Assembly: GCF_018977255.1 (NCBI RefSeq)
Contig: NW_024704767.1
Location: 1-64,000 of the forward strand
Direction: 5' to 3'
Length of the DNA stretch: 64,000 nucleotides
Origin: Callorhinchus milii
Lineage: Eukaryota
The notes beneath the pieces are model-generated. The model saw only the letters and a program-made list of their open reading frames with translations, ran no database searches and was not told where the DNA came from. The position numbers and the translations under genes are program-made. Positions 48,651 to 63,804 of the stretch are shown piece by piece (the first letter of the stretch is position 1; the number at the start of each line of letters is the position of its first letter).

Positions 48651-49240
48651 AAAATTGTGCTGCGTGAGTGCTGCATTGTCAGAGGTATCCTGTTTCAAAA
48701 GAGCCATTAAACCGAGTTTCTCATCTGCCTGATCTGTCCAGCATTAAAGATCCTATTTCAAAAGGGAAGAGAGTTTCTCCTGGCAACATGGCATACACGT
48801 CCACCAGATGAATTACTTCATGGTTGTTTGTGTGAACCTGCTGGCACAAACGGTTGTGTGTTTACCTACAAAAAACAGTGAGTCCACCTGACAATAATTA
48901 CCCTTGAAGCTTTGAGTTATTTCTTAACATAGTATTTCTTAAATTGAAGGTACTTACCGGAATTGTCTGAGTTTATCACATTCTCTCCTCCCAATTCCAA
49001 GAAAGGACTTCTTCATGTGCAGAGATTCACAAAGTAGATTAAATCGAGCGAGTTACACACTATCCAGAGGATGGGAATGTACAGGGAAACTTCATTTGCG
49101 ACACATTGTGCATTGTGCAAATTCTGAACGAAAGAACAACAACAACTTGCAATATAGCGCCCTTCACATGGAGCAGCATCTCAGAGCGCTTAATATGGTG
49201 AGACACATCTCAAGCCTGCAGAGAAGTTTCCTTAGGAGAT

Positions 49241-52200
49241 ATGGCCAAACCCTGTTCAGCTATTTCAGAGCTCAGGATGAACAGCACTGCCAGAAAGTCT
49301 GGCCCTAACCACATCGCTGGCAGTTATCAAGCAGGGACTGATAGGAGATCATCCATGCTCACAGACAGTGGGGTCGTCTCAGATTCTTCTGAGGACAAAA
49401 TCCGGCCACGTTGGTCCACGTTGAAGGAGACAGAGAAAGGGGAGAATGCTGACAGCACAGGGGAGGGGATAACACACAGCGGCAAAGAGAGCCAAGGCAA
49501 TGTCTCCATTGATCGAAGGATAAATGAAGAACAATGTGCGGAGGGAAAAAGCCCTATAGTGAGGCCGTGCGTACAGTCCAGTCTATTTAGACCAAGACTT
49601 CTGATACTTTCCTGCGGAGTTAAGCATTGGGCTGATATAACAGCTGCAGCATGGCCACATGTAACTGTGGTGAGTTACACACACGAGTCTACCACATTGG
49701 ATTCTATTCTAGCACAAGTCGGTGAGGCTTTAAATGGAAAGAAAGTCAGATCCATTGCCTTTGTGCCTCATAGTCAACAAGATGCGCTTCATATCTGTGG
49801 TGCTGGAGAGACCCAGACACTTACACCGCGTTCTGTTCTTGAACACAAAGCTTTACGTAGTTTCTTTCACAACATTGTCACCAGCTACTTGGATGTGAAT
49901 GATTCAGAAGCAATTCTAGACTTCCTGGGCTGCACTTCCTTACTCTCTGGGGATCTGGAGACCATCCGAAGAGAACTGGAGTCCGTGACAAGTATGTTTT
50001 GGATATTCTGATTGCAATGATATTTGTTACGATCATCATGTATGTATAATGTGTTTTGTATATATGCAATATCTTTAGAGACATAAATATAGAGCAGCGT
50101 TTATGGTATAGATAATATATAATAATTATAATAATCTTTGCATTTGATATAGCGCTTTATCACATCTTCGAGATGTCTCAAGATGCTTCAAATATATATA
50201 ATATATATATATTTCAATTAAGCATCTTTGCCTCCTTCAGACTTCTTGTCTTCCTACAGGCTTTCACAAACCCAGACTTGCCATTACCTAACCACTGCTC
50301 GACTTGTTTCACTTCTGTCCTACTCTTTCCAACTTTAATGCTGTTTAGTAACAGTGCCTTTTCCCTTCATTTAGGTTTCTCCATTTAAAATAAATTAGTC
50401 ATTCACTTCATGGTTGTTTGTGGGACATTGCTGTGCACATATTGACTGCCACATTCACCTGCGAAACATGATAAGGCATGATGCGAAATGCAGGATTATT
50501 ATTATTAATCATAATGTCATTTCTATTCTCAATATTCAGATAGTCTGCCTGTTTTAGGCAATTACCTGAATGTTGAGAATATAATTGGCTTTACTATTAA
50601 TATTATATCTTCTAGGATAAAACGTTGTTGGTGTTTAGAAATGTGTATAATCCAAATAATTACATTGGAGAGTCTCTTAATCATTTACTTGGATTATCAA
50701 AACTTGGGACAATAATTAACTGGAACATTCTGTAATGACAGGCAATAACTAACTAGTTTTTAGCAAAGAAGCTCAGAGAAAGAACTTTCATTAACACAGA
50801 GCTCATTGCAATGTTGTAATTGTGGCATTTCTGTTCAACATTGCATTTAGTGCAGTGTTAATGAAAGAACATTATAGCATGGAAACAGGCAATTCAGCCC
50901 AACTAGTCCATGACCATTTCCCTCTTAATCCCCTCTCCTCCACCCCTCTCACCTCGTTTCCCTCACACAGTCACAACATTTTCTCTTAAACACATTGATT
51001 ATTTCTGCTTCAATGAGAGCTTCTGGCAATGAGTTCCTCATTCTCACCAGTCTCTTTAGAAATAAGTTCTTCCTAAACTCCCTTTTAGATCTGCTACTTT
51101 CTTACTTTACCATTCTGATCAGTTCCCAACAAGTGTTTGTTTTTTTTAGTGGATATTCTCTCTACTTTAGTTCTATCTCTGTTTTAGCAGTCTGTGCGGA
51201 TGCTTGATAAACATATTCTGAAAACCCAATGGGATAATTAATCAGGATTTAATGAACTTTTCCCCCACTACAATTGTCTCACAATGCAATGCTCTGTCTT
51301 GATCACTTACAAACATAATTCCCCACTGATTTCAGTCCAGATGAAATATCTGGAGAGCCAAACATAATAATCAATTCATACAGAATGGTCACATTCAGGA
51401 ACCTCTGTTTGACCATTAGCTTAACAGCCTACAGATACCTTCTGTTTCAAGAATACCAAAAACGCTTCCCATATTGGTTAGAATTAATGACTGATCTGAG
51501 CTAATGATTATTTTACTCCACTGTAAACTCTTAACACCCTTTGAGCTATTTGTCCTCGACTTTCACAGGGTGTGTTGGTCCATGTTTATGTTTGAACCAA
51601 AGCCATTCAGCTCAGCACATAATAGACAGAAGGGTGGGAGGAATTCACTGTGCGCATTTGATAGCAGGGAGTCATCAACATGCAACTGAACAAATACAGT
51701 AAGACACTTAATGTTTGAGATCATTAATAATCAAAATACATGACTGTCAGATTACTGTATGTTTAGTTCCCAACAGTCAGACTGGACTCTGCATTAGTTC
51801 ATGTGTACAAGGGCATGAATTGTGGGAAAAATGATAGTAAGGGAGGGGAAAAAGCACAGATTAGTATAAGTGATCCAGTCACTGAACACTACTGTACTCA
51901 TTGAATGTTATTCCCATTGTTGGAGTTACATGGAGGGTCTCCGTCAATTGGTTTTGAACGTGTGCAGAAGCACCATTTTACGGTGAAACTGGATAATGGA
52001 ATCAGCTGAAGGTAACATAACTGGGTTTACCCCATAATGTTCTGGAAGTGGATCTTCAAAATGCCCTGTGGTTAAGGTCAGGGCTGCACTCCAGCACACA
52101 CATCCACCACCACAAAAATCCAGTGTCTTTAATAGCAAATAGGAGGTTTGTGCAGAGCTTAGTATATGAAGAGTAGCCATGCAGTTTGTCCAGGATAGCA

Positions 52201-55200
52201 TATAGTGTTTGTTGTGTATGTGTGTGTATTGGGGGTTGGGTGGGTGGGGGAGAGAGAGGGCGCGAATGCAGGAGTTTATGATGTCTGTAGTAGGATGGGT
52301 GGTTGTATATGTAATGAGTGACCAGATATTTGATTAGACTTCTACTGAAAGATAACTAAGGTGTGTCTTCCTCTCCACAGGTGTCCCGGTGTCCATGGCG
52401 AGAGACGTATTGGGGAGCGAGCTACAGGCAGCTCCGGATCAGGATGGGACAAAGCTCCACATATTGGACCTTTACTGTGACAAACTGAAGCAGCCCCACT
52501 CTCAAACCCTGGCAGAGTTTGAGAAGATACACACAGTGGGAAAAGGTGAGGTGGGAATGAGAAGCGACATTGAGGCACTATATCAAATGCAAGGATTATT
52601 ATTATTATTATATTATTACCAAATGCTTGTGCGCAGTTCATTCAAATACGTGTTTAGTGAATTGTGTAAAGAGTAGTGTTTCTGTTGCCTGAGAGCAGGT
52701 GTCTGATATCGCCTGTGTCCTTGATGTGTCAGGGGCCTACGGGACGGCTGTTTTGTATCGGAAGAAGGACGATGATTCACTGGTTATACTGAAAGAGATC
52801 AACATGCACGAGTTGAACCACATTGAGAGACAGAGGGCAATGAACGAGGTTAGCGTTTAGCTCCAATAGATTGAAACTAACCTGGTCATGTCATTACACT
52901 GCTGGCGTGCCAGTGGGTGATGCCAAGTGATAGAAGGAGATGCTGCATTTGGTGTGATTTCTATCTGGATTTGACTGTGTTATACAGCATTAGGGTGATT
53001 TTAATCCATTATAAAGTCTGTTAACCTTTTACATTCAGCTTTTGGCTTTCCTGTTGTTGCCTATTATCTCTTGCAAAATGCTGCCCTTTCATTCTTGGAA
53101 GGAAAATAAATAAGATGCATTTAGCTTCATACGTTTGCAAACACTCACCAATTTAACTGTGATTAAAATCCCATGTCGACTTCAACCACCTCCAGGGACC
53201 ATATCACCTATTATATATAGTGGTGCCCAATATCATTCCCTTGATCTCTGAGCATGTACTCCCTACCCTGATGCTGCAGTTCAGTGTGAGCGAATGTGCA
53301 GAGGCCTTAAGGTCCTGTTGTGAGTGACTGTGTGAGTGAGCCAGCCTCTGACCTACATGTTTGTTCTGGCTGCTGCTGTAGGTGAAGGTGCTTTCCATGT
53401 TAGACCATCCCAATATTATCAGCTACTACGACAGCTTCGAGGAGGAAGGCTTGCTGATGATTGAAATGGAATATGCTGACGGAGGAACCCTGGCACAGTA
53501 CCTGGCACAGCAGGTAATAATATGATATAAGAAGGTATTTACCAAGCGGCATGTTTAGAGGGGAGAGCTCCGACAGACATTTGCCAAATATAGTTTTTCA
53601 CAGTCAATCCACTTCACGGGATATCCTGTGAAGTGCTTTGAGATGCCTTGATGATGTAATAAGACTATATCAAATGCAAGAATTATTATTATGATTAAGC
53701 AAGAGTACTACCAACTGAGCCAGGCTGACCCCTGAAATGGGTGTTTCAAGACATACTTGAAAAGAGTTAAATGTGGTAAAACATGCGTTTCCGCACTGTT
53801 GTGTGAGAGCCTGATTGATGTCTGTGTGTGACAGGACGGGGAGTTGGAGGAACGGGATATACTCAATCTCTTTCACCAGATGGTGGCCGCCATCTCCTAC
53901 TTGCACGAACACAATGTGTTGCATCGAGACCTGAAAACAGCAAACATCTTCCTCACCAAAGACAGCGAGGTGAAGCTCGGCGATTTCGGGGTGGCTAAGG
54001 TGATGTCAACAGGAAGCGAGGCACACACTATTTTAGGTAAGGGTGTTGCTTGCCTCTGAGAAATGGGTTGAGGACGAGTTGGATGGGGCACAGTGGAAGC
54101 AGATTAGATGCTACATTCTAGGTATCAGAGGTTGGTGTAGGGTAGATACAGGTAGGATCGAGGCACCAAGTCAGATATAAAAGGAATAGACAGGTAGAGC
54201 TATGAATACAGTGTACATATAGGTTGGATTATGGTAAACAGTGTGGTTTTAGCTCGTTAATCTCTAACACTAACCCCAGTGCACACTCTGGAGTATCCAA
54301 ATCTTGGTTCTTGCCTCCCTGCACCTAAATTCTTCAGAATTGGGTAAGCAGGGAGCATCCCTTTGAGGAGAGAGTAATGCAATCCAAACCAGATAAACCA
54401 CACACATGTGGAACTCCCAATAGTTTGGTTTAGAGACAGGGAGGGAAAGGAAGGTTCGCTGAGGATACAGGTGGGTTGTAGTTATGGTGGTCCATGTGCA
54501 GTGTGAATTACACAGATGATGAATGTCTCTCCATGTTATTGAGGAGGATTAATCAGGTGGAGACTTTGTACCTGACAGGTACTCCCTATTACATCTCACC
54601 GGAGATCTGTGAAGGAAAGTGCTACAATGAGAAATCAGACATCTGGTCACTTGGCTGCATTCTTTACGAGATGGCCTGTCGTCGACGCACGTTCGAAGGT
54701 AAAGGGCCACAAAAATATCGACTCATTGTAACTTAAGAAAGTGCTTGAGGTAAAATAGAGAGGGGAGTTTCTTTCGGTGTCCTGGACAACAATCCCCCGG
54801 TAAAATTGGTCATTCAATTTATGGCTGTTTGTGGACCTTGCTGTGCACAGTTTAGCTACCACATTCTCCTACAACATACAGTCACTCCACTTTACAGTAA
54901 GTTCTGTGAAGCGCTTTGAGACATCCTCCCAACGTGAAAGGCGCTGTATCAAATGTCAGGATTATTATTATGACAAATGAGGTAGACATGAAAAAGACTG
55001 GAGTAAAGTAAAAATGTTATAATGTGTGTTGAATATAATGTCAGAGCTCCCCCCAGTGCCCCAGTGGATAAAACTCACCACAAAATGAAGCATTGTGTCA
55101 AGCATATGAAGGCTTTCGGTTAAAATTCTGATTGCAAGATCACAATAGAGGTGCAGGTAATAAGGGCCCTTTCACCCATTTGATCTCTTTCTCCCAATTG

Positions 55201-58200
55201 CTGTGCGCAATTGGCTGCCGCGTTTCTCCCACAAAATATACAGTCAACTCACTTTTCAGTGTATTCCGTAAAGCCCTCTGAGACATCTCAACGACATGAT
55301 AAGGCGGTATATCAAACGCAGGATACTTTCTTCTTCTCACAGGCACTAACCTGCCAGCGGTCGTGAACAAAATCATGAAGGGGCAATTTGCTCCGATCAC
55401 TGACAGGTACAGCCCTGAGTTGAAAGCGCTTGTGACGGACATGCTGCAGAAGGAACCTCAGTAAGTAGTAAACTCTTCCACCTCCTTGGGACATCCTCCT
55501 GACTTGAAAGGCGCTGTACAAATGTAACTTGTTGCAGATGGTCAGGAAGGAAAAGATGTTCCCACAAACCGGGTAACTCACCAGCTTTAAATTTCTCACC
55601 TGTTCTGTGACCCGGGTTAGGTACCGTCCTGCTGCTCACGAGCTGCTGTACGTTCGCATCCCCGAAGCCTTGGTGAAATACAAAGAAACTCCAGACGAGG
55701 AGGCAGGAGCTGGGATCAGTGACCCTCAACCTCACCCGAATCACAAGCGAAACAGGCGCTCGGCTCTTTATCACCTTCACGTGCCTGACCTGGAACTTTG
55801 CCCGATTGAGGGGTTCCCCACAAAGATCAGAATCACACAGGTAGGTGCGATCCAAACATTGTTTTCAGAGTTTATAAAAACAGCAAAATAATTTGGCCCG
55901 TTGGGACTGGTTTGTGGGACACCGCTGTGTGCACAGATTCGCTGCTGCGTTCACCTACAAAATAAAGTGATTGCACTTTACAAAAAAATCTGTGAAGCAC
56001 TTTGAGATGTCCTGATGTGACACTTGCTTGTATTTTGATATACTGAGGGGCTATATCAAGTGCACGGAATATTATTGTTTTCTTTTGTTGATAATGACTC
56101 TCTTTTTTAATCTTAAAGATATCCTGAACTGTGACTCTCCGAAAGGTTGGTTGGTTTCTTGCTATTCCTCAGCTCTGCACCATCAGAGGTCATGACAACC
56201 CTTAACTTGATCTTCCATGTGGTTTTTTTGCTGGTGGTGCAGATGTGTTCGTTCGCTCCTTTCACCACTAGAGGGTGGGTTGATTCCCTTTGACACCAAA
56301 CACAATACCAATGCGTTCAGTCAGTCATGAGCCCCTTTCACCACGAGAGAGAGCGCTGTCTCCATTTAAATCCATTCACTGCCACTGTATTCAGTCAGAT
56401 CAGTGATGGGCACAATCTGTGCTTTATACAGGAGACTGAGAGCTGCATACATGCCACCTACATATGGAAAAAGCCTTCACACAGCCTCCTGACCCTAAGG
56501 AGAGAACTGCAAGATCCCTGAACTAAGACTATGGGCTAAATTCCCAAATAGACCTGACAATTCGGATCTAAGAAAGACCAACGTGAGCGGATAAACTTGC
56601 TTCTGGATCAAGATTTTTTTTTGGTCAGCTGGGTGTCTGGTACATGCGGAAACCCATCACCGTGCTTAAGAGTATCCGAACCAAACTGAGAATTACTTGC
56701 ATCCCACCTGCAAGTGGAAATCCCGGAGAGAGATTGTTGGAATGGAATGTGCGTTCTCTCTCTCTCCCTGGAGGGCCACATACTGCTTACCTGATTTCGG
56801 AAAGCATTAGGCGCAGGTTGACAAAAGCCAAGGTTTTGGGATCTCAGAGTGTGCATTGGGGTAACTGCTGGAGGACAAGATGAAGATACAGGGGAGAAGG
56901 TGCCACTTGAGAAACACAGTCAATAAGCAGAATATGTGCATCTGAGAAATGTCTCTCTGGATCTACCCTCATGTGAAAGTGTCTCAGGATTAACACTGAA
57001 ATGTGCACAACAAGAGGAGGAACATTCCAGAACAGTGCAAGGGACTCCCTCCCTCCCTCGCAACCCGAAGCAGCAAAAACAAACCAACGCGCTTGATGCA
57101 AAACTCAAGATATTTCCCTGATAAGAATGCAGCAACATCAATGAGCATCACAACAAAAGGGAAAACCTCCGAAGAGAGAGATGGATCAAAGAATTTTCCA
57201 GGAAAATAGTATTACAAAGCAAAACTCCGACAATGAAGGAAGGGTGTGAAGATTAATGATGCAACCCCTGGCCAAGGCAAACAATCTACAGAGAGAAAAC
57301 CTCCTGCTCGCTTGTCAATCGAGGGATTAGCTCCCAGCTGGAGACGTGCAGTTACACAATAGGATGCATGAGCGAGGTTCTCTCTCTCTCTCCTTCTCTC
57401 TCTCATCCCCAACCCGCACATCCCGGCATTTATAATTTCTCCATATTAGATTGTGGATTGAGTGACACAATTATTGATATATATATATTTTTTGAAGGGA
57501 TTATTACTCCCAGAAAGTGATCCGCCCATCAACTAACTGAGGCGACCGTTTTAAAGCACAGCCTCACCACCAAGTGGACATGACCTGTTCATCATTGTCA
57601 CTGGCTAAATCCACCACATTGCCAATGCTCCTAAACCATTAGCTCACAGAAGATACTGACCACCTCAATCACTCAGGAGCTGCAAGGACTTGTACTGACC
57701 AGCCTTAGCCTAACTGAAGCAAGAGAGAGAGAGTAAGAGGCAGCTGGGCTTCAGCTAAGTGAGGTCTGAGAGTGAGCGACAAGTTTCATACTCAACTCTG
57801 ACTGACTGAATAAAAGGATTGTAAGTGCGAGAGAGAGAGGGGTATATCCCTAGGGCTCTAACATAACTTTCTGGTTGGATGCAGAGACCTCTGTTATTGA
57901 GCTGCTGATCTGGCCTCAGGGTCAAGATATTTTTTATTAAGACACTATGAAAATGCATTGTCATATTGGAGCCTGGATTATTTTATTGTCACTGGCCTTT
58001 TACCCTCACCCATCACGATGTTGGGGACAAAGGATTTTACTCTGGGAAATGCAGCCGGGAGTGGGGCAAGGGTTAAATACATTAGTTCCAGTTTTGCCTG
58101 TTCTGCAAAGATCAGGTCCTCAAAACCTAAGAGAACAGTAAAGATGGTGTCCGTACTGTGATCTATCACCCTTAATGATTTATCGCTGAGATTGAACAGG

Positions 58201-61200
58201 TTTTAGGATTGAATCTGAAGAATTTATAAAATTAGCTGGGTTTATTTATGCTTACGTTGGCCATCATGTGTTTTCGAGCTGGAGAATATTGGGGGAATCT
58301 TAATAGGAATCTGTCTTGGATGCTAAACACAAATGATGTGTAAGATGGGGGAGGGAGGGAATTCACAACTCAAACCTGCTTAAAGGATAACATTGCTCAA
58401 TCAGTCTATCCTGTTGTGGATAATGTATTGATCTAATTCCCTTACTGTTTCCCTTTAATGTTTTTTCTCACATATCTATTCCTCCCAAGGATTATTATTA
58501 TTTATTCCATTCATTTTTAAGTGTTATTATTGACTAAGCTTCAACAGCCATTTGCCATATTCTAACAACGTTCTGTGAGAAAAAAGATCTTCTAACCTTC
58601 ATGAAACTATTTAAAATCAGTCATTCATTTCATGGATGTTTGTGTTGCATTACTATGCACAAATTCACCTACAAATACAATACACATTCACTACAATTTA
58701 TAGTAAATTCTGTGAAGTTCTTTGAGACGTCCTTCTGGTGTGAATAGCTCACAGAGAGACTGACATAACCTGCAGGCGGTGTGAGGCTGTGAGGCATAGT
58801 TTATTAATATTTTATTGCACTGATCCTTTGATATAAGTAGTTATTTCAAAGCACAGGCATGGGGAATTGGATAGAGCTTGCTGGCCTTTTCCAGATAAAT
58901 AGTCGTATTAAAAGTACAATAAAACATTAAAATCATTTCCCATTTGAAAGGTCGTACAATAGGCAACTGCACAAAGGCCAGCATCGCCTTTTAAATATGT
59001 AGATAATAATTTTGCCGATTGCTCTGTGCATCGCAAATGCCCTTTTAACAGATGCATCTAATAAGTCAGGTCTCAACCTTTACATTTCACAACACCAGCA
59101 ATTTATTAACACTCCTATATTTGCTTGGGAGCTTACGATGAAAGCTGTTCTTTTCCAGAGTCCCCTTTATCCAATGTGTTTGATTCCCGTTGTGTGCGTG
59201 CCTGCTGCAGCAGTCTTAACATTTTTTAAATATATATTAAAACGTTTTTATGAAATATTGTCTGAAGGTGGGGTGGGGTGGAGCGAGAATATACAAAGAG
59301 CTGGATTCTGATGCAGGCCCCCTTTCTGTCTCTGTGATATCCAGTTATGGTTTTGCCCACAAAACATACAGTCAATTCACTTTGCAGTATATTCTGTGAA
59401 GCGCTTTGTGACGTCTCAAAGAAGTGATAAGGTGCTTTATCAAATACAAGGATCAGAATTATTATTATGGTTAGGATTAGCTCCATATCAAGGTTCTTAC
59501 CATACTCAACAGAGTTGGGGCCCTATAGTTCTTAAATTGACAAAGTTTGATGACTAATACTTTCTTTTCGAAAACCACGACATCTCTTTCCCTTCCGTCT
59601 CCTTTTCCCATTGCCGCGGCAGGTTGCTGTGAGTGATGGCCACACGGTGGCAGTGGGGATGGAGAGAGCAGTGTACACGTGGGGGAGGAACCGGAAAGGA
59701 CAGCTCGGTCACGGAGATCTGCAGTCACGCTCGCGGCCACAGCTGGTGGATGCACTGAAAGGAAAAGCCATCGTCAGGTATTAACGAGTAGAATCCTGTA
59801 CCTTAGTGGTTAGAGCGCTCGCCTCGCAAGCCAGAGGACCTGGGTTCGATTCTCGGGCAGGGCGAATGGTTAGGCAAGTTTCCTTACTCCACTCCACCAG
59901 TAATCAACTGACCACAGTCAGCAGTGGTCAGTTAAGGGTTTGCGCCTGAGCCGAGGGTTGAAATCAAGAGGGTTATTACGGTAAACGCTTTGAGACGCCG
60001 TCCGACGTGAAGGTGCTGTAGAAATGCAAGTTGTTGTTGTTGGAGGGTAGGGGGAGTGGGGTTTGGAGTCGGGCCGAAGGCACGGTCAAAGAGTCTCAAA
60101 GTTATTAAGATCCTTAGGTCACTCTGTTAACCATTTGCCTTTGCCTTCACTTGCAGGGCCTGTTGTGGAGATGTGTTCAGTGTGTTTCTCAGTGACAATG
60201 GCATTGTGATGACCTGCGGTGACGGATCCCAAGGCTGCCTGGGACACGGGGACCTCTGCAGCACCTCCAGGCCTTGTCTGATCGAAGCCCTTCTCAGTGT
60301 AAACGTGCAGGACATTGCCTGTGGCCTGCAACACGTGGTGTGTGTCGATGGTGATGGGGAGGCAAGTCATTCGTTTACAACACATCTTTTTGTTTAAAAA
60401 AAAGTTTTGCTTATTTGTATTTATATTTACCAGAAAGGATATTTCTGTTTATATTTTTTAACAGGAGCTGACTCTCCTCACCCCACACTCAGCTCCTGTT
60501 AAAACTGCAAGCCAAAGGTGTAGTGTGGTTCTAGCTTCACATGCAGAGAGAAGTGTAGTTGATTTATATATGATTTTGATACTCTTAAGGATGCTGGTGG
60601 GTTTCCACATGTCCAAAACACAATCAGGGCTAACTTGGTGTACATTGGTGTACGTATCCAGAGATACAAACAACATAGTCAGCCCATTTTACAGTATATT
60701 CTGTGAAGCGCTTTGCTTCCCGTGTCTCGATGACGTGATAAGGCGCTATATCAAATACAAGTATTATTATTACTATTATTCTTCCCCTTTCTGAGGCTGA
60801 TAATTAGGAACACCGTTGCTGTCTCTATAGCTTACACTCACCAAGGTAACGTCCTTCAGAGAGAGAATTGGAGGAGGAAGTTATGGTTTGAAAGAAGTTT
60901 TTTTTTAAACATTTCTCTTTCTAAAAACATCCGATCTTGATGGAGATTCTTTACCACATTCTTGCTGTCCAGGTGTTTTCCTGGGGCAATGGGAGACATG
61001 GAAAGCTGGGGCTTGGGAATGAGGATGATCACTGTGTGCCAGTGAAGGTGGCCTTTGAGGAACAGGTCTTCATAAGAGATGTGCGCAGTGGATCTGATGG
61101 AACCATGTTCTTAACAGGTACCTGTTTAATGGCGCAAAACCTGTAGCTGACAGTTCATTTACTGTTTCCATCAAAATGAAAGATATAATGCACAACTCTC

Positions 61201-63200
61201 CATTCTGAATCTTAAACAAGTTATTTGTGATGTGTGAAAATCAATTGTTTTCTGTTGTTATTTTTCACTAATTATAAAAAAAAGTTTCAAAATATGCAAT
61301 TGGCTGCCACGTTTCGCCCACAAAATATACAGTCACTTCACTTGACAGTGTATTCTGTGAAGCACTTTGAGACATTACAATGTCATGATATCAAATGCAA
61401 GCATTATTATTATTTGGTCAGGTACAGGGCTCACTATTTTTTCAATTAGTTAATGGCTCTCGCACTAAAAGTTCAACTGCAAAATACTCCCAGCCCTTCA
61501 GCCTTTAATTGTCCTGGCTCAGTTGTTCTGAAACTTGTTTTGTGCCCTTCAGATACTGGCAGTGTCTTGGCCTGTGGTAACAATCAATACAATAAACTGG
61601 GTCTGAATGAGAGACGGGGCCTTCTCATGCAGATGACAACACTGTTTGCACGAGTAAGTACTCTTTGTTATATTGCCCACAAGTGACCGTTTTTATTCTG
61701 TGATCCTGGAGAGAAAGAGAGAGTTTATGGCTTTGAGAGGAGAGGAGGAGAGGAGGAGGGGATGAAGGAAATTACTCATCACCTCCATCCCCCTCTGCAC
61801 TGAATTCCCACTCTCACCAAATTTCTTCCCCCACCCCCACCCTCACTCATGGCACAGTAGACATGTTAACTAAACTACCATCAAAAACACTTAGTATTGG
61901 GGTCTGCCACTCCCCAGTTGTGAAAAGATCTTCTTGTTGCTTGTTGTTGACATTGCAGTGTAGGGTCGGCACTCCCACCAGACAACTCTAACAATTGTTC
62001 AGCTTCACCACTGCGCTGTCAATCATTTGATTTTGCATCAGTGTTTGTTTCAGAGTTTACCCTTAACAGTGGATTCACACCCGGAACTCGAAACATGACC
62101 GATTTCTGTTCTCTTCCCCTCTGTAGACTGATGTTGAAGGTAGGAAGGTCCCCACAATCGTAAAGGCATTGAGGCACCATCGTGTGAGAGACGCGGTCCT
62201 CGGCCCATCTCACAGCATTGTCCTGGTGGAGCCCGGCCTTCTGTTTACCTTCGGGAAGAACACAGAGGGACAGCTTGGCACTGCCAACACCAAAGCGTAT
62301 AAAGTACCAGTGCATGTGAAGGAGCTCCAGGATAAAACGTTAACTGTGAGTGATGATACAACCATTAATGTATTTCATACACTGAACTCTAACTGTTGCA
62401 AATGAGTCTTTGTTTCAAGATCAGTAATATCTTACAAAAACCTTTGGTTGATGGTAGTGAATCTTTATTTGGTGAGTTACCAGATCTCAGTCAGGTCAGC
62501 AGTTTAGGATGTGGGCAAGAGTTGTCTTCAGTAGCCCTCAGTTACGATTGGAAAATCATCCTCCTAACTTTTAAATTTCTTTCCTTCCCCTCTCTCACTC
62601 AAGACACTTGGTTGCGGAGAGACATTTAGCGTTGTTGGGGCTGATGATAATTCCATCCTCTTCTGGGGAACCAAGCACAGATCTGCAGGATCGACAGATC
62701 AGCTGGGCCTGACCGCTGTGAATCAAGCAGCCACAGAGGTAGCAGGAGCTCCAGTCTGCCCACCCAAAGCCGAGGAGCCCAGTGTGAGGCCAGGCAACTC
62801 CACTGCGAGGAACAAAGACACTGACAGTGAAAATCATAAAAAGGAGCAAGTTGGAACCAGCCTGGGAAAAGAATCGAAGCAAGCTGGAGAGGGAAACTTG
62901 GATGCACAAGAATCATCTTCGTTGATTCCTGCAGCACAGGTATATTAATTTACATGTTATGCATATATATATTCCTTACATTTGATAAAGCGCCTTATCA
63001 CATCATTGAGATATCTCAAAGCGCTTCACAGAACATACTTTAAAGTGAATTGCCTGTGCATTTTGTGGTCGAAACGCGGCAGCCAACATCTATATTGTTT
63101 CAACGGTAAGTTTTTACTCTTCTGGTTTTGTTGCAGAGAGTGTCCAAGCCAGACTCACTGGAAGAACATGTCACGTACATGAACTCAATGTCTGTGAAAG
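49241..63200 (+). CDS. NEK8/NEK9-like NIMA serine/threonine kinase with RCC1 repeats and an N-terminal DUF4347-like domain; continues past the window end
   Basis: Phase-consistent exons 49241-49991, 52381-52545, 52733-52848, 53382-53513, 53835-54036, 54579-54698, 55343-55460, 55621-55840, 59623-59777, 60157-60361 (GC donor), 60973-61117, 61553-61653, 62127-62345, 62604-62939, 63137-63200. Kinase motifs [38 protein letters not shown]; RCC1 repeats [54 protein letters not shown]. Start codon (49241 vs 49277 or an upstream exon) is uncertain. Confidence 0.88.
54280..54435 (-). mobile_element. Unclassified dispersed repeat, copy 3 (degenerate)
   Basis: GCACACTCTGG..CCAA..CTTGG..TTGGGTAAGCAGG blocks shared with 10888-10961. 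Confidence 0.55.
55195..55330 (+). mobile_element. Deu-domain SINE 3' half, ending at the acceptor of kinase exon 7
   Basis: GCTGTGCGCAATTGGCTGCCGCG core, then tail CAAACGCAGGATAC leading into TTTCTTCTTCTCACAG. Confidence 0.8.
56620..56872 (+). mobile_element. Unclassified ~250-bp dispersed repeat, copy 4
   Basis: TTGGTCAGCTGGGTGTC..GAAACCCATCACCGTGCTTAAG..ACCAAACTGAGAATT..GCATCCCACCT..GTGGAAAT matches the reverse complement of copy 1. Confidence 0.72.
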
Positions 63201-63474: not shown

Positions 63475-63804
63475 ATTATAATAATAATAATAATCCTCGC
63501 ATTTGATATAGCGCTTTTCACTTCGGGAGAACGTCCCAAAGCGCTTCACAGAATATACTGTCAAGTGAATTGACTGTATATTTGTGGGCGAATGCGGCAG
63601 CCAATTGCGCACAGCAATGTCCCACAAACAGTCATCGATTGAAAATGACCAATTTATTATTATTGTTTTGTTTCTTTGGAGGGATTATTATTATCAGGCA
63701 TGTGGAGTAAGGAAACTTGCCCAAGGTTTCGCCCTCTGCCTGGAATTGAACTCGGGTCTCTCGCTTGCAAAGCGAATGCTCTAACCACTGAGCTACAGGA
63801 CTCC
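63475..63804 (-). mobile_element. Full-length tRNA-Ala-headed Deu-domain SINE; representative of more than 30 copies or fragments in the window
   Basis: Head GGAGTCCTGTAGCTCAGTGGTTAGAGCATTCGCTTTGCAAGCGAGAGACCCGAGTTCAATTCC (A-box, TGC anticodon loop, B-box), core TGTGGGACATTGCTGTGCGCAATTGGCTGCCGC, L2-like tail, (TTA)n end. Confidence 0.9.

What the first reader, a model, noticed from the sequence alone, without database searches (positions are those of the whole stretch)
49241..63200. Three-module kinase: DUF4347-like domain, NIMA kinase and RCC1 propeller
Seen: the 751-nt first coding exon ends A|GTATGT (phase 1) and joins exon 52381 in frame, giving ...[21 protein letters not shown]...[19 protein letters not shown]. 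The extra domain runs across the splice junction straight into the kinase. Its pattern ([72 protein letters not shown]) recalls bacterial DUF4347 and the related regions of ECT2L and NSMF. Established: NEK8 and NEK9 have kinase plus RCC1 with no folded domain before the kinase. Inference: a kinase architecture I have not seen described in vertebrates, plausibly ciliary or cell-cycle related.
Basis: partly seen in the sequence, partly recalled or inferred. Interest (0 to 1): 0.85.

Follow-up and report, generated by a model that had tools for sequence, protein, structure and literature searches.

The report
Shark NEK kinase with protease-like head
This elephant-shark gene encodes a cell-cycle/cilia-type NEK kinase that carries an extra protease-like domain in front of the kinase, and it belongs to an old, unstudied animal gene family that was found in cartilaginous fishes but in no bony vertebrate.

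Summary
Exon 1 (49241-49991) is an open 250-codon frame. A transcript-like contig of run X1 joins 49991 to 52381 (GT..AG); the DNA-like runs X2 and X5 lack that joint. Exons 2-15 match the public Callorhinchus milii protein "Nek8-like" (P0124) exactly. P0124 uses a small alternative first exon (51680-51698) and lacks the N-terminal domain.

Residues ~116-250 fold confidently (pLDDT >90). Family profiles match ECT2L residues 282-474 (E 1e-25). The best structural match is the DUF4347 protein Tce1 (Z 9.0).

The architecture, head domain then NEK kinase then RCC1 propeller, is not unique. 117 of 125 stored family proteins have it, from cnidarians to 15 cartilaginous-fish species. No bony vertebrate, cyclostome or insect appears among the best 120 hits.

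The His/Cys pair of the putative bacterial proteases is present here (H177, C231) but in only 39 of 117 family proteins. I therefore favour a targeting or regulatory role for the head over proteolysis.

No paper found in the searched library describes this family. Its exact relation to NEK8 and NEK9 is unresolved. This is a new variant of a known kind, of moderate interest.

The parts
49002..49240 (+). transcribed 5' UTR continuous with the start codon
   Evidence: An X1 contig covers 49002-49270. An in-frame TGA lies 13 codons upstream of the ATG.
49241..49991 (+). coding exon 1 (250 codons + 1 base, phase 1)
   Evidence: Open frame. Donor A|GTATGT. Joined to 52381 in the X1 contig.
49241..49585 (+). 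N-terminal ~115 residues, predicted disordered
   Evidence: Ten-residue block means of pLDDT run from 45 to 70 over residues 1-110, with no secondary structure.
49364..49381 (+). DSGVVS motif (residues 42-47), conserved in cartilaginous fishes
   Evidence: DSGxx[ST] is present in 11 of 96 family proteins with 25 or more residues before the domain. All 11 are chondrichthyan.
49586..49991 (+). DUF4347 / Tce1 / ECT2L-like alpha/beta domain (residues ~116-250; its last motif continues in exon 2)
   Evidence: pLDDT 90-98 over residues 120-250. Tce1 chain 9qpe_G: Z 9.0, rmsd 3.1, 125 residues aligned. ECT2L E 1.1e-25.
49769..49771 (+). His177 codon (FVPH), at the family's 'His' position
49931..49933 (+). 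Cys231 codon (DFLGC), at the family's 'Cys' position
49992..52380 (+). intron 1 (GT..AG, 2389 nt), with SINE-like repeats
   Evidence: Skipped in the X1 contig and continuous in X2 and X5.
51680..51698 (+). alternative first coding exon (MQLNKY + 1 base) used by the public C. milii model P0124, which lacks the head domain
   Evidence: Donor GT at 51699. X1 has no depth here.
52381..52545 (+). exon 2 (165 nt, in-frame cassette): end of the head domain, a linker, and the start of the kinase ([13 protein letters not shown])
52733..52848 (+). exon 3, kinase ([17 protein letters not shown])
   Evidence: Exact match to P0124. An X1 contig lies on it.
53382..53513 (+). exon 4, kinase
   Evidence: Pkinase E 2.4e-07. 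Exact match to P0124.
53835..54036 (+). exon 5, kinase (HRDLK, DFG)
   Evidence: Pkinase E 4.3e-20..
54579..54698 (+). exon 6, kinase (GTPYYISPE)
   Evidence: Pkinase E 3.4e-12..
55343..55460 (+). exon 7, kinase C-lobe
   Evidence: Exact match to P0124. No Pfam hit for this exon alone.
55621..55840 (+). exon 8, end of the kinase and the linker
59623..59777 (+). exon 9, RCC1 repeat
   Evidence: RCC1 E 5.4e-13..
60157..60361 (+). exon 10, RCC1 repeat; followed by a GC donor (GCAAGT)
   Evidence: RCC1 E 3.3e-12..
60973..61117 (+). exon 11, RCC1 repeat
   Evidence: RCC1 E 9.6e-13..
61553..61653 (+). exon 12, RCC1 region
62127..62345 (+). exon 13, RCC1 repeat
   Evidence: RCC1 E 3.5e-13..
62604..62939 (+). 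exon 14, last RCC1 blade and the start of the low-complexity tail
   Evidence: Exact match to P0124. No Pfam hit for this exon alone.
63137..63200 (+). exon 15, C-terminal tail; the gene continues beyond the window
   Evidence: Exact match reaches P0124 aa 772 of 1173.

Best explanation
**What it is.** This is the Callorhinchus milii member of an ancient metazoan NEK-kinase orthogroup. Its protein reads, in order:

- a disordered N-terminus;
- a DUF4347 / Tce1 / ECT2L-like alpha/beta domain;
- a NEK kinase domain with the expected catalytic motifs;
- an RCC1 beta-propeller;
- a long tail that lies outside the window.

**What is shown.**

- Exon 1 is transcribed and spliced to the kinase exons.
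- The head domain is a confident fold, homologous to ECT2L's central domain and to bacterial DUF4347.
- The whole architecture is conserved from cnidarians to cartilaginous fishes, and was not found in bony vertebrates.

**What is inferred.**

- The kinase is active. The glycine loop, the VILK lysine, HRD, DFG and SPE are all present.
- The RCC1 propeller acts as a protein-interaction or autoregulatory module, as described for NEK8 and NEK9.
- The head domain acts mainly as a non-catalytic targeting, oligomerisation or regulatory module, possibly at centrioles or cilia. Two observations support this. The His/Cys pair that defines the putative bacterial proteases is kept in only about a third of family proteins. 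And the homologous ECT2L domain lacks both residues, while ECT2L has been assigned as a dimeric microtubule-associated protein of the ciliary transition zone.
- This species keeps both His177 and Cys231, so residual protease or self-processing activity remains possible.
- A shorter isoform without the head, from an alternative first exon, may coexist.
For: **Splice and transcription**
- the X1 contig shows the joint 49991>52381 (GT..AG). The joint is absent from X2 and X5, and X1 has no depth in unique intron sequence.

**Identity of the gene**
- exons 2-15 match C. milii P0124 exactly.
- kinase motifs and RCC1 repeats are present, exon by exon.
- the best solved kinase matches to the family profile are NEK1 (1.2e-35), NEK2 and NEK7.

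**Head domain**
- pLDDT is above 90 over residues 120-250.
- family profiles hit ECT2L at E 1.1e-25 and 2e-19.
- 23 of 48 aligned homologues match DUF4347.
- Tce1 at Z 9.0 is the only match with Z >= 8 among 48,161 chains; the next is 6.2.
- PMC8262886 (one passage read) says PA0256 carries DUF4347. PMC13323088 (passages read) equates PA0256 with Tce1.

**Conservation of the architecture**
- 7 of 7 long hits scanned have Pkinase plus RCC1 after the head.
- the best 120 of 2054 hits all belong to this family and include 15 chondrichthyan species.
- 117 of 125 stored family proteins have the head.

**Non-catalytic reading**
- His and Cys are both present in only 39 of 117 proteins. His is Ser in 23 that keep Cys, and Cys is Ala in 12 that keep His.
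- ECT2L has Asp at the His position and no Cys.

**Ciliary lead**
- bioRxiv 10.64898/2026.06.11.731632 (three passages read): an ECT2L dimer was assigned as a microtubule-associated protein on the B-tubule of the transition-zone doublet.
Against: - X1's RNA status is the tool's guess, and only one contig from one run shows the joint.
- Exon 1 alone does not reach Pfam's DUF4347 threshold.
- Foldseek found no PDB match at E <= 0.001.
- No experiment bears on localisation, kinase activity or the head's role.
- The ECT2L assignment in the preprint rests on docking predicted models into a cryo-ET map. It does not say which ECT2L domain binds.
- This species and most sharks keep both His and Cys, which could equally argue for a catalytic head here.
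- Absence from bony vertebrates rests on a list cut at 120 rows and a 0.55-1.75x length filter, and on names looked up for only 20 of the 79 hits.
- The relation to NEK8 and NEK9 was not resolved by a tree.
Confidence: 0.8

Rival explanations
1. The head domain is an active clan-CD-like cysteine protease. It might self-process or cleave substrates to control the kinase, making this a protease-kinase fusion enzyme.
For: His177 and Cys231 sit at the two positions that carry His and Cys in 29 of the 99 non-family domain instances and 39 of the 117 family proteins. In the model each lies just after a beta strand. The only outstanding structural match is Tce1 (Z 9.0). Its authors propose Tce1 as a cysteine protease with a His186/Cys240 dyad like the TcdB protease domain, and they show that the paralogue Tce2 is toxic to yeast in a Cys115-dependent way (PMC13323088, passages read). 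All 8 shark rows in the table that cover both positions, plus the window's own protein, keep both residues.
Against: The pair is lost in 78 of 117 family proteins, including Mobula birostris and skates (Tyr for His), many molluscs (Ser for His) and crustaceans (Ala for Cys). The ECT2L homologue lacks both residues. Tce1 itself showed no activity or toxicity in the paper. The TcdB protease domain was not among the top 50 structural matches, and caspases reach only Z 5.1-5.3, which is the noise level. I could not check residue-level superposition on Tce1's dyad.
Confidence: 0.2
2. The functional product in this species starts after the head, from the alternative first exon 51680-51698 or the Met at 52395. 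On this view the exon-1 form is a minor or non-productive transcript.
For: The public C. milii model P0124 starts with MQLNKY from 51680-51698 and lacks the head. Headless isoform models are also stored for Mobula hypostoma (P0121), Pristiophorus japonicus (P0122) and Mustelus asterias (P0123). A 97-codon upstream ORF (49015-49308) overlaps the exon-1 ATG.
Against: X1 has no depth at 51677-51813 but does hold the exon 1 to exon 2 joint. The head is conserved in 117 of 125 family proteins across phyla. The domain's last conserved motif is encoded in exon 2, so the short form would start inside a domain. The 6-codon first exon could be an annotation device to supply a start codon.
Confidence: 0.25
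3. The gene is simply the cartilaginous-fish NEK8 or NEK9, with a lineage-specific extra exon, and not a separate family.
For: NCBI's automatic names for family members are 'Nek8-like' or 'Nek9-like'. The nearest named clusters in the protein atlas are NEK8 clusters (score 0.99).
Against: The best 120 hits to kinase plus RCC1 are all long proteins of this same architecture, at 45-100% identity, from cnidarians to chordates. None carries the name of a bony-vertebrate NEK8 or NEK9. The atlas lists a separate arthropod NEK8 cluster of 577 aa beside a 1498-aa 'uncharacterized' cluster. The head is present in cnidarian members too (for example P0160, P0170, P0204), so it is not lineage-specific.
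Confidence: 0.07

Closest known systems
NEK8 and NEK9 (the two human RCC1-containing NIMA-related kinases)
   Same: A NEK kinase domain is followed by an RCC1 beta-propeller. Automatic names and atlas neighbours point to this clade. The review PMC11974183 (abstract and passages read) describes the RCC1 domain as a protein-interaction module, autoinhibitory in NEK9.
   Different: This family has a folded ~150-residue domain before the kinase and a ~400-500-residue tail after the propeller. It forms its own set of orthologues from cnidarians to sharks and was not found in bony vertebrates. Parker et al. 2007 (PMC2031824, passages read) state that, with rare exceptions all in Tetrahymena, Nek kinase domains lie at the N-terminus.
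ECT2L central domain (PDB 11xu, residues ~282-481)
   Same: Significant profile homology over the whole head domain (E 1.1e-25; E 2e-19 with alignment).
   Different: In ECT2L the domain is embedded in another protein, named 'epithelial cell-transforming sequence 2 oncogene-like' in PDB 11xu and treated as a Dbl-like RhoGEF in PMC5499878. It is not fused to a kinase. ECT2L has Asp at the His position and no Cys at the Cys position. A 2017 survey found no ECT2L orthologue in C. milii, a skate, the whale shark or lamprey (PMC5499878, figure legend read). That is the opposite distribution to this kinase.
Bacterial DUF4347 (PF14252), e.g. Pseudomonas aeruginosa Tce1/PA0256 (PDB 9qpe)
   Same: Same fold: Z 9.0, rmsd 3.1 A, 125 residues aligned. 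23 of 48 aligned homologues of the head match PF14252. His and Cys occupy the two hallmark positions.
   Different: 13% identity. Tce1 was not found by sequence with the eukaryotic profile. Tce1 is a secreted effector loaded into Hcp3 rings, while many other bacterial members are giant repeat proteins with cadherin-like, Big_9 or FG-GAP domains. Exon 1 alone is below Pfam's threshold.

Membership tests
NIMA-related kinases (NEK) | Eukaryotic protein-kinase domain with intact catalytic motifs, closest to NEK kinases | tested here: met
   Pkinase was found in 3 of 5 kinase exons scanned singly. The motifs GKGAYG, VILKEI, HRDLK, DFG and GTPYYISPE appear in the exon translations. The family profile's best solved kinases are NEK1 (1.2e-35), NEK2 and NEK7.
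RCC1-containing NEKs (NEK8/9 group) | RCC1 repeat propeller C-terminal to the kinase | tested here: met
   RCC1 repeats at E 3e-12 to 1e-12 in 4 of the 5 RCC1-region exons scanned. RCC1 and WD40_RLD are present in 7 of 7 orthologues and homologues scanned.
NEK8 or NEK9 orthologue | Groups with vertebrate NEK8 or NEK9 in a phylogeny; kinase at the N-terminus | tested here: inconclusive
   No tree was made, because no NEK8 or NEK9 sequences could be fetched: the best 120 rows were all this family. The N-terminal-kinase feature is not met, since the head domain precedes the kinase. Names split between Nek8-like and Nek9-like. Atlas neighbours are NEK8 clusters.
Pfam DUF4347 (PF14252) | Score at or above the gathering threshold (24.6 bits) | tested here: not met
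   Exon 1 scores 14.5 bits, E 0.03, over residues 121-187. Members of the same family do pass, for example P0017 at 33.9 bits, and 23 of 48 aligned homologues match at E <= 0.01.
DUF4347 / Tce1 fold | Same three-dimensional fold as a solved DUF4347 protein | tested here: met
   9qpe_G (Tce1): Z 9.0, rmsd 3.1, 125 of ~135 residues aligned. It is the only chain of 48,161 with Z >= 8, and the same result came from pdb_via. Foldseek alone gave nothing at E <= 0.001.
ECT2L-type domain | Profile-level sequence homology across the domain | tested here: met
   E 1.1e-25 (profile positions 62-253 against chain 282-474). E 2e-19. A single-sequence search gave only E 0.26.
Clan-CD-like cysteine protease (as proposed for Tce1/Tce2, TcdB protease domain) | Conserved catalytic His and Cys after adjacent strands | tested here: inconclusive
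   H177 and C231 are present in this protein, but both are kept in only 39 of 117 family proteins. Residue-level equivalence to Tce1 His186/Cys240 could not be checked, because the tools return no coordinates. Caspases reach Z 5.1-5.3 only, and the TcdB domain is not in the top 50.
Clan-CD-like cysteine protease | Proteolytic activity | not testable with these tools
   This needs biochemistry. Even for Tce1 no activity was shown (PMC13323088, passages read).
   No NSMF sequence was available from any tool. None of the 5 papers that mention DUF4347 concerns NSMF.

The most novel reading that the evidence does not exclude
The last common ancestor of eumetazoans had a third RCC1-NEK. Its N-terminal clan-CD-like domain is a working, possibly self-processing, cysteine protease or a cilium/centriole-docking module that gates kinase activation. 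Cartilaginous fishes are the only vertebrates to keep it. Bony vertebrates lost it while keeping the same domain in ECT2L at the ciliary transition zone, so the two proteins would be alternative carriers of one targeting function.
Probability: 0.12. Interest if true: 0.8.

Novelty: new variant of a known kind. Interest (0 to 1): 0.55.

Why it matters
Reviews describe vertebrate NEKs as eleven kinases with the catalytic domain at the N-terminus, two of them (NEK8, NEK9) with RCC1 propellers. This gene shows that cartilaginous fishes keep a further RCC1-NEK with a folded, protease-like domain ahead of the kinase. It belongs to a family present from cnidarians to amphioxus that has no published description in the library I searched.

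The finding matters in three ways:

- **Annotation.** It corrects the public elephant-shark model, which lacks the head.
- **Domain biology.** It links three poorly understood things: eukaryotic DUF4347, the ECT2L central domain and the bacterial Tce effectors.
- **Experiments.** It offers a tractable system, in sea urchin, Nematostella, amphioxus or shark cells, to ask what this domain does next to a ciliary or mitotic kinase.

The family is missing from human, mouse and zebrafish, so its function has escaped the standard models.

Tried and rejected
**Single-sequence searches with exon 1 were weak.** Pfam DUF4347 gave E 0.03, below threshold, and ECT2L gave E 0.26. Only family profiles made the links significant.

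**Structure searches were mostly uninformative.** Foldseek against the PDB gave no match at E <= 0.001; the list was generic alpha/beta proteins. The all-against-representatives structural search was needed to find Tce1. A second look added only caspases at Z 5.1-5.3, which I treat as noise. The TcdB protease domain was not recovered.

**A universal His-Cys catalytic dyad was considered and rejected as a family-wide feature** (39 of 117).

**A NEK8/NEK9 tree was not possible.** The best-120 cut was filled by the family itself. No stored protein had a length that would admit NEK8 and NEK9 while excluding the family. I therefore did not spend the third large protein search, and the relation stays unresolved.

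**The protein-atlas search gave leads only**: NEK8 clusters, with no ids.

**Literature searches.** Searches for 'DUF4347' (5 papers, none on NEKs) and 'Nek8-like' (2 papers, both listings only and irrelevant) found no description of this family. The search 'Nek9-like OR RCC1' was badly posed and returned only RCC1 papers. Supplementary tables S2 and S3 of PMC5499878, on ECT2L presence by taxon, could bear on the complementary-loss idea and were not seen.

I did not fold a full-length orthologue, because the tool returns no inter-domain error map or coordinates. The NSMF link was not tested.

**Limits of the name look-ups.** Names were looked up for 20 of the 79 hits. In one search, 9 of the 10 clusters held named animal proteins. 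In one search, 4 of 10 carried names, all invertebrate.

Full report
**The observation**

Positions 49241-49990 translate into 250 codons without a stop. An in-frame TGA lies 13 codons upstream of the ATG. The exon ends A|GTATGT, and an AG at 52379-52380 precedes exon 2. Exon 2 reads (S)[11 protein letters not shown]...[13 protein letters not shown]. Exon 2 ends at 52545 (165 nt, so it is an in-frame cassette), and exon 3 is 52733-52848.

**Transcript evidence**

The look-up of sequencing runs listed 12 runs, of which 5 hold the exon. One of these, X1, is guessed to be RNA; the kinds of X2-X5 are unknown. I laid X1, X2, X5 and X6 on 48800-52900.

- X1 has a 914-nt contig on 49244-49991 that continues at 52381-52546. 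This is a GT..AG joint skipping 2389 bases, with 166 letters on the shorter side.
- X2, X5 and X6 have no contig with that joint.
- X2 and X5 cover the intron continuously, for example with contigs on 48800-50097 and 51069-52589.
- X1 has zero depth in every bin from 51129 to 52224.
- A further X1 contig covers 49002-49270, giving a continuous 5' UTR. Another carries exon 3 inside a 467-nt record.

X1 therefore behaves as a transcriptome, although its label is only a guess and the support is one contig of one run.

**Identity of the gene**

The public protein P0124, 'serine/threonine-protein kinase Nek8-like [Callorhinchus milii]' (1173 aa), matches the window's exons exactly and contiguously from aa 8 to aa 772. 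The window is therefore elephant-shark DNA, and the gene runs off its 3' end.

P0124 begins MQLNKY. That sequence is encoded at 51680-51697, inside intron 1, and is followed by one more base and a GT donor. So the public model uses a 19-nt alternative first coding exon and lacks the 250-residue head. X1 shows no depth at that place.

By exon-length arithmetic, the exon-1 form would be 244 residues longer than P0124. Searches were exon by exon or used public full-length orthologues.

Scanned singly, 3 of 5 kinase exons hit Pkinase and 4 of 5 RCC1-region exons hit RCC1. The exon translations carry GKGAYG, VILKEI, HRDLK, DFG and GTPYYISPE.

**The head domain**

Alone, exon 1 gives only weak hits:

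- Pfam DUF4347 at E 0.03 and 14.5 bits, against a 24.6-bit cut-off;
- ECT2L at E 0.26.

A full HMMER search of 1.84 billion representative proteins found 79 proteins at E <= 0.001. Of 7 long hits scanned, all 7 had Pkinase and RCC1 after the matched region, and one (P0017) passed the DUF4347 threshold.

I aligned exon 1 with 47 homologues (A1).

- As a profile, A1 hits ECT2L (PDB 11xu) at E 1.1e-25, profile positions 62-253 against chain residues 282-474.
- A domain-only alignment (A2) gives E 2e-19.
- Of the 48 members of A1, 23 match DUF4347 at E <= 0.01 (best 2e-46). Among these are bacterial giants with cadherin-like, Big_9 and FG-GAP domains.

AlphaFold2 with A1 gives pLDDT 90-98 for residues 120-250, with alternating strands and helices. 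It predicts no structure for residues 1-110.

- Foldseek found nothing in the PDB at E <= 0.001.
- The exhaustive structural search found one outstanding match among 48,161 chains: 9qpe_G, Tce1 in the Hcp3-Tce1 complex, at Z 9.0, rmsd 3.1 A and 125 residues aligned. The next match is Z 6.2, and pdb_via gave the same result.

PA0256, which is Tce1, is the protein described as carrying DUF4347 in PMC8262886 (one passage read). PMC13323088 (passages read) proposes Tce1 and Tce2 as cysteine proteases with a His/Cys dyad like the TcdB protease domain. That paper shows Cys-dependent yeast toxicity for Tce2 but no activity for Tce1.

The family consensus continues past exon 1 as L-E-x-L-x-G-V-x-V-x-x-S-x-x-x-x-G. 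Exon 2 supplies [11 protein letters not shown], so the domain does cross the splice junction.

**The family**

A search with the head region of the Mobula orthologue found 14 proteins, all from 12 elasmobranch species. Exon 1 is 49-60% identical to them over near-full-length alignments, best with Heptranchias at 59.7%.

A search with kinase plus RCC1 of the Amblyraja protein found 2054 proteins at E <= 1e-30, of which the best 120 are listed. By my reading of the names, those 120 rows comprise:

- 15 cartilaginous-fish species, including C. milii;
- hemichordates, amphioxus, tunicates and echinoderms;
- molluscs, annelids, nemerteans, a brachiopod and a priapulid;
- chelicerates and crustaceans;
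- cnidarians, an acoel, a flatworm and a nematode.

No bony vertebrate, cyclostome or insect is named among them.

Of the 125 family proteins I had stored (all and hits plus 11 long hits, isoforms included), 117 have the head. The 8 without it include truncated or alternative models such as P0121-P0124.

Names looked up for 20 of the 79 hits gave no vertebrate other than Mobula. In one search only 4 of 10 had names.

NCBI's automatic names are mostly 'uncharacterized' or 'Nek8-like', and a few are 'Nek9-like'. The protein atlas puts NEK8 clusters nearest. It also shows a separate 577-aa arthropod NEK8 cluster beside a 1498-aa 'uncharacterized' cluster. This suggests, but does not prove, that the family is distinct from NEK8 proper. 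I could not fetch NEK8 or NEK9 sequences for a tree.

**The His/Cys question**

In this protein the two hallmark positions are His177 (49769-49771) and Cys231 (49931-49933). Across the 117 family proteins:

| Residues at the two positions | Count |
|---|---|
| His and Cys | 39 |
| Ser and Cys | 23 |
| His and Ala | 12 |
| Ser and Trp | 7 |
| Tyr and Cys | 6 |
| Other combinations | remainder |

The shark rows keep both residues. Mobula birostris and the skates have Tyr for His. ECT2L aligns Asp at the His position and has no Cys. These counts are of sequences, not independent events.

The pattern argues that whatever the head does for this kinase family does not generally need the dyad. It leaves open activity in lineages that keep it, including this one.

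**How it most likely works**

- *Shown:* a transcribed gene encodes head, kinase and RCC1 in one frame, and the architecture is ancient.
- *Inferred from established knowledge of NEK8 and NEK9 (review PMC11974183, abstract and passages read):* the RCC1 propeller is a protein-interaction or autoregulatory module, and the kinase is regulated through its activation loop.
- *Inferred here:* the head is a targeting, oligomerisation or regulatory module.

The only functional hint for its eukaryotic homologue comes from the preprint 10.64898/2026.06.11.731632 (three passages read). There an ECT2L dimer was assigned, by docking predicted models into a cryo-ET map, as a microtubule-associated protein at one end of the transition-zone linker of bovine cilia. 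This makes a ciliary or centriolar role plausible but untested.

PMC5499878 (two passages read) reported no ECT2L orthologue in C. milii, a skate, the whale shark or lamprey. That is the mirror image of this kinase's distribution. I note it as a lead only, since it dates from 2017 and I could not re-test it.

**Novelty**

Parker et al. 2007 (PMC2031824, passages read) state that, apart from rare exceptions all in Tetrahymena, Nek kinase domains are N-terminal. The review PMC11974183 counts two human RCC1-NEKs.

The searches 'DUF4347' (5 papers), 'Neks+RCC1+phylogenetic+Nek8+Nek9' (8 papers) and 'Nek8-like' (2 papers) found no description of this family in the library searched. Subscription journals are mostly outside that library.

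The gene models themselves are public. What is new is the recognition of the family, of its head domain's relatives, of its vertebrate distribution, and the correction of the C. milii model. I rate it a new variant of a known kind, with interest 0.55.

Noticed in passing
window 51680-51698: A 19-nt alternative first coding exon (MQLNKY plus one base, GT donor at 51699) is used by the public C. milii model P0124. It has the same phase as exon 1. Run X1 shows no depth there. It may be a real alternative promoter or an annotation device.
   Followed up: partly
window 49364-49381 (residues 42-47): A DSGVVS motif sits inside a conserved block ([16 protein letters not shown]). The block is shared by 11 chondrichthyan family proteins and by no invertebrate one (11 of 96 with enough N-terminus). 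From memory, it resembles a DSGxxS phosphodegron of the beta-TrCP type. This was not tested.
   Followed up: partly
window 52381-52545; Mobula birostris P0001: Exon 2 is 165 nt, an in-frame cassette. Mobula isoform X4 (P0001) lacks the equivalent segment. That would remove the end of the head domain and the start of the kinase glycine loop.
   Followed up: partly
window 60362-60367: The intron after exon 10 starts GCAAGT, a GC-AG intron, judged from the exact match of flanking exons to P0124.
   Followed up: no
window 59793-59864 (+) and 63731-63801 (-): Two tRNA-Ala-like sequences (anticodons CGC and TGC) lie in introns. They are probably heads of tRNA-derived SINEs.
   Followed up: no
window 50033-50443: A repeat in intron 1 has summed contig depths up to about 227,000 in the DNA-like runs and about 46,000 in X1. 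It is a very abundant interspersed element. Similar 'TATCAAATGCA..ATTATTATTATT' units recur in other introns.
   Followed up: no
window 49015-49308: A 97-codon upstream ORF starting at an ATG at 49015 overlaps the main start codon in another frame. From 49002 on it lies within the transcribed 5' UTR.
   Followed up: no
window 49312, 49482, 49557, 49567: Four single-base differences between runs lie in exon 1. By my reading of the codons, two are synonymous (His24, Pro109) and two change residues (Gly81Asp, Ile106Thr). All lie before the folded domain.
   Followed up: partly
PMC5499878 (paper), not a window place: A 2017 survey found no ECT2L orthologue in C. milii, Leucoraja, Rhincodon or lamprey. 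ECT2L carries the homologous domain in bony vertebrates, which were not found to have this kinase. This may be complementary retention.
   Followed up: no
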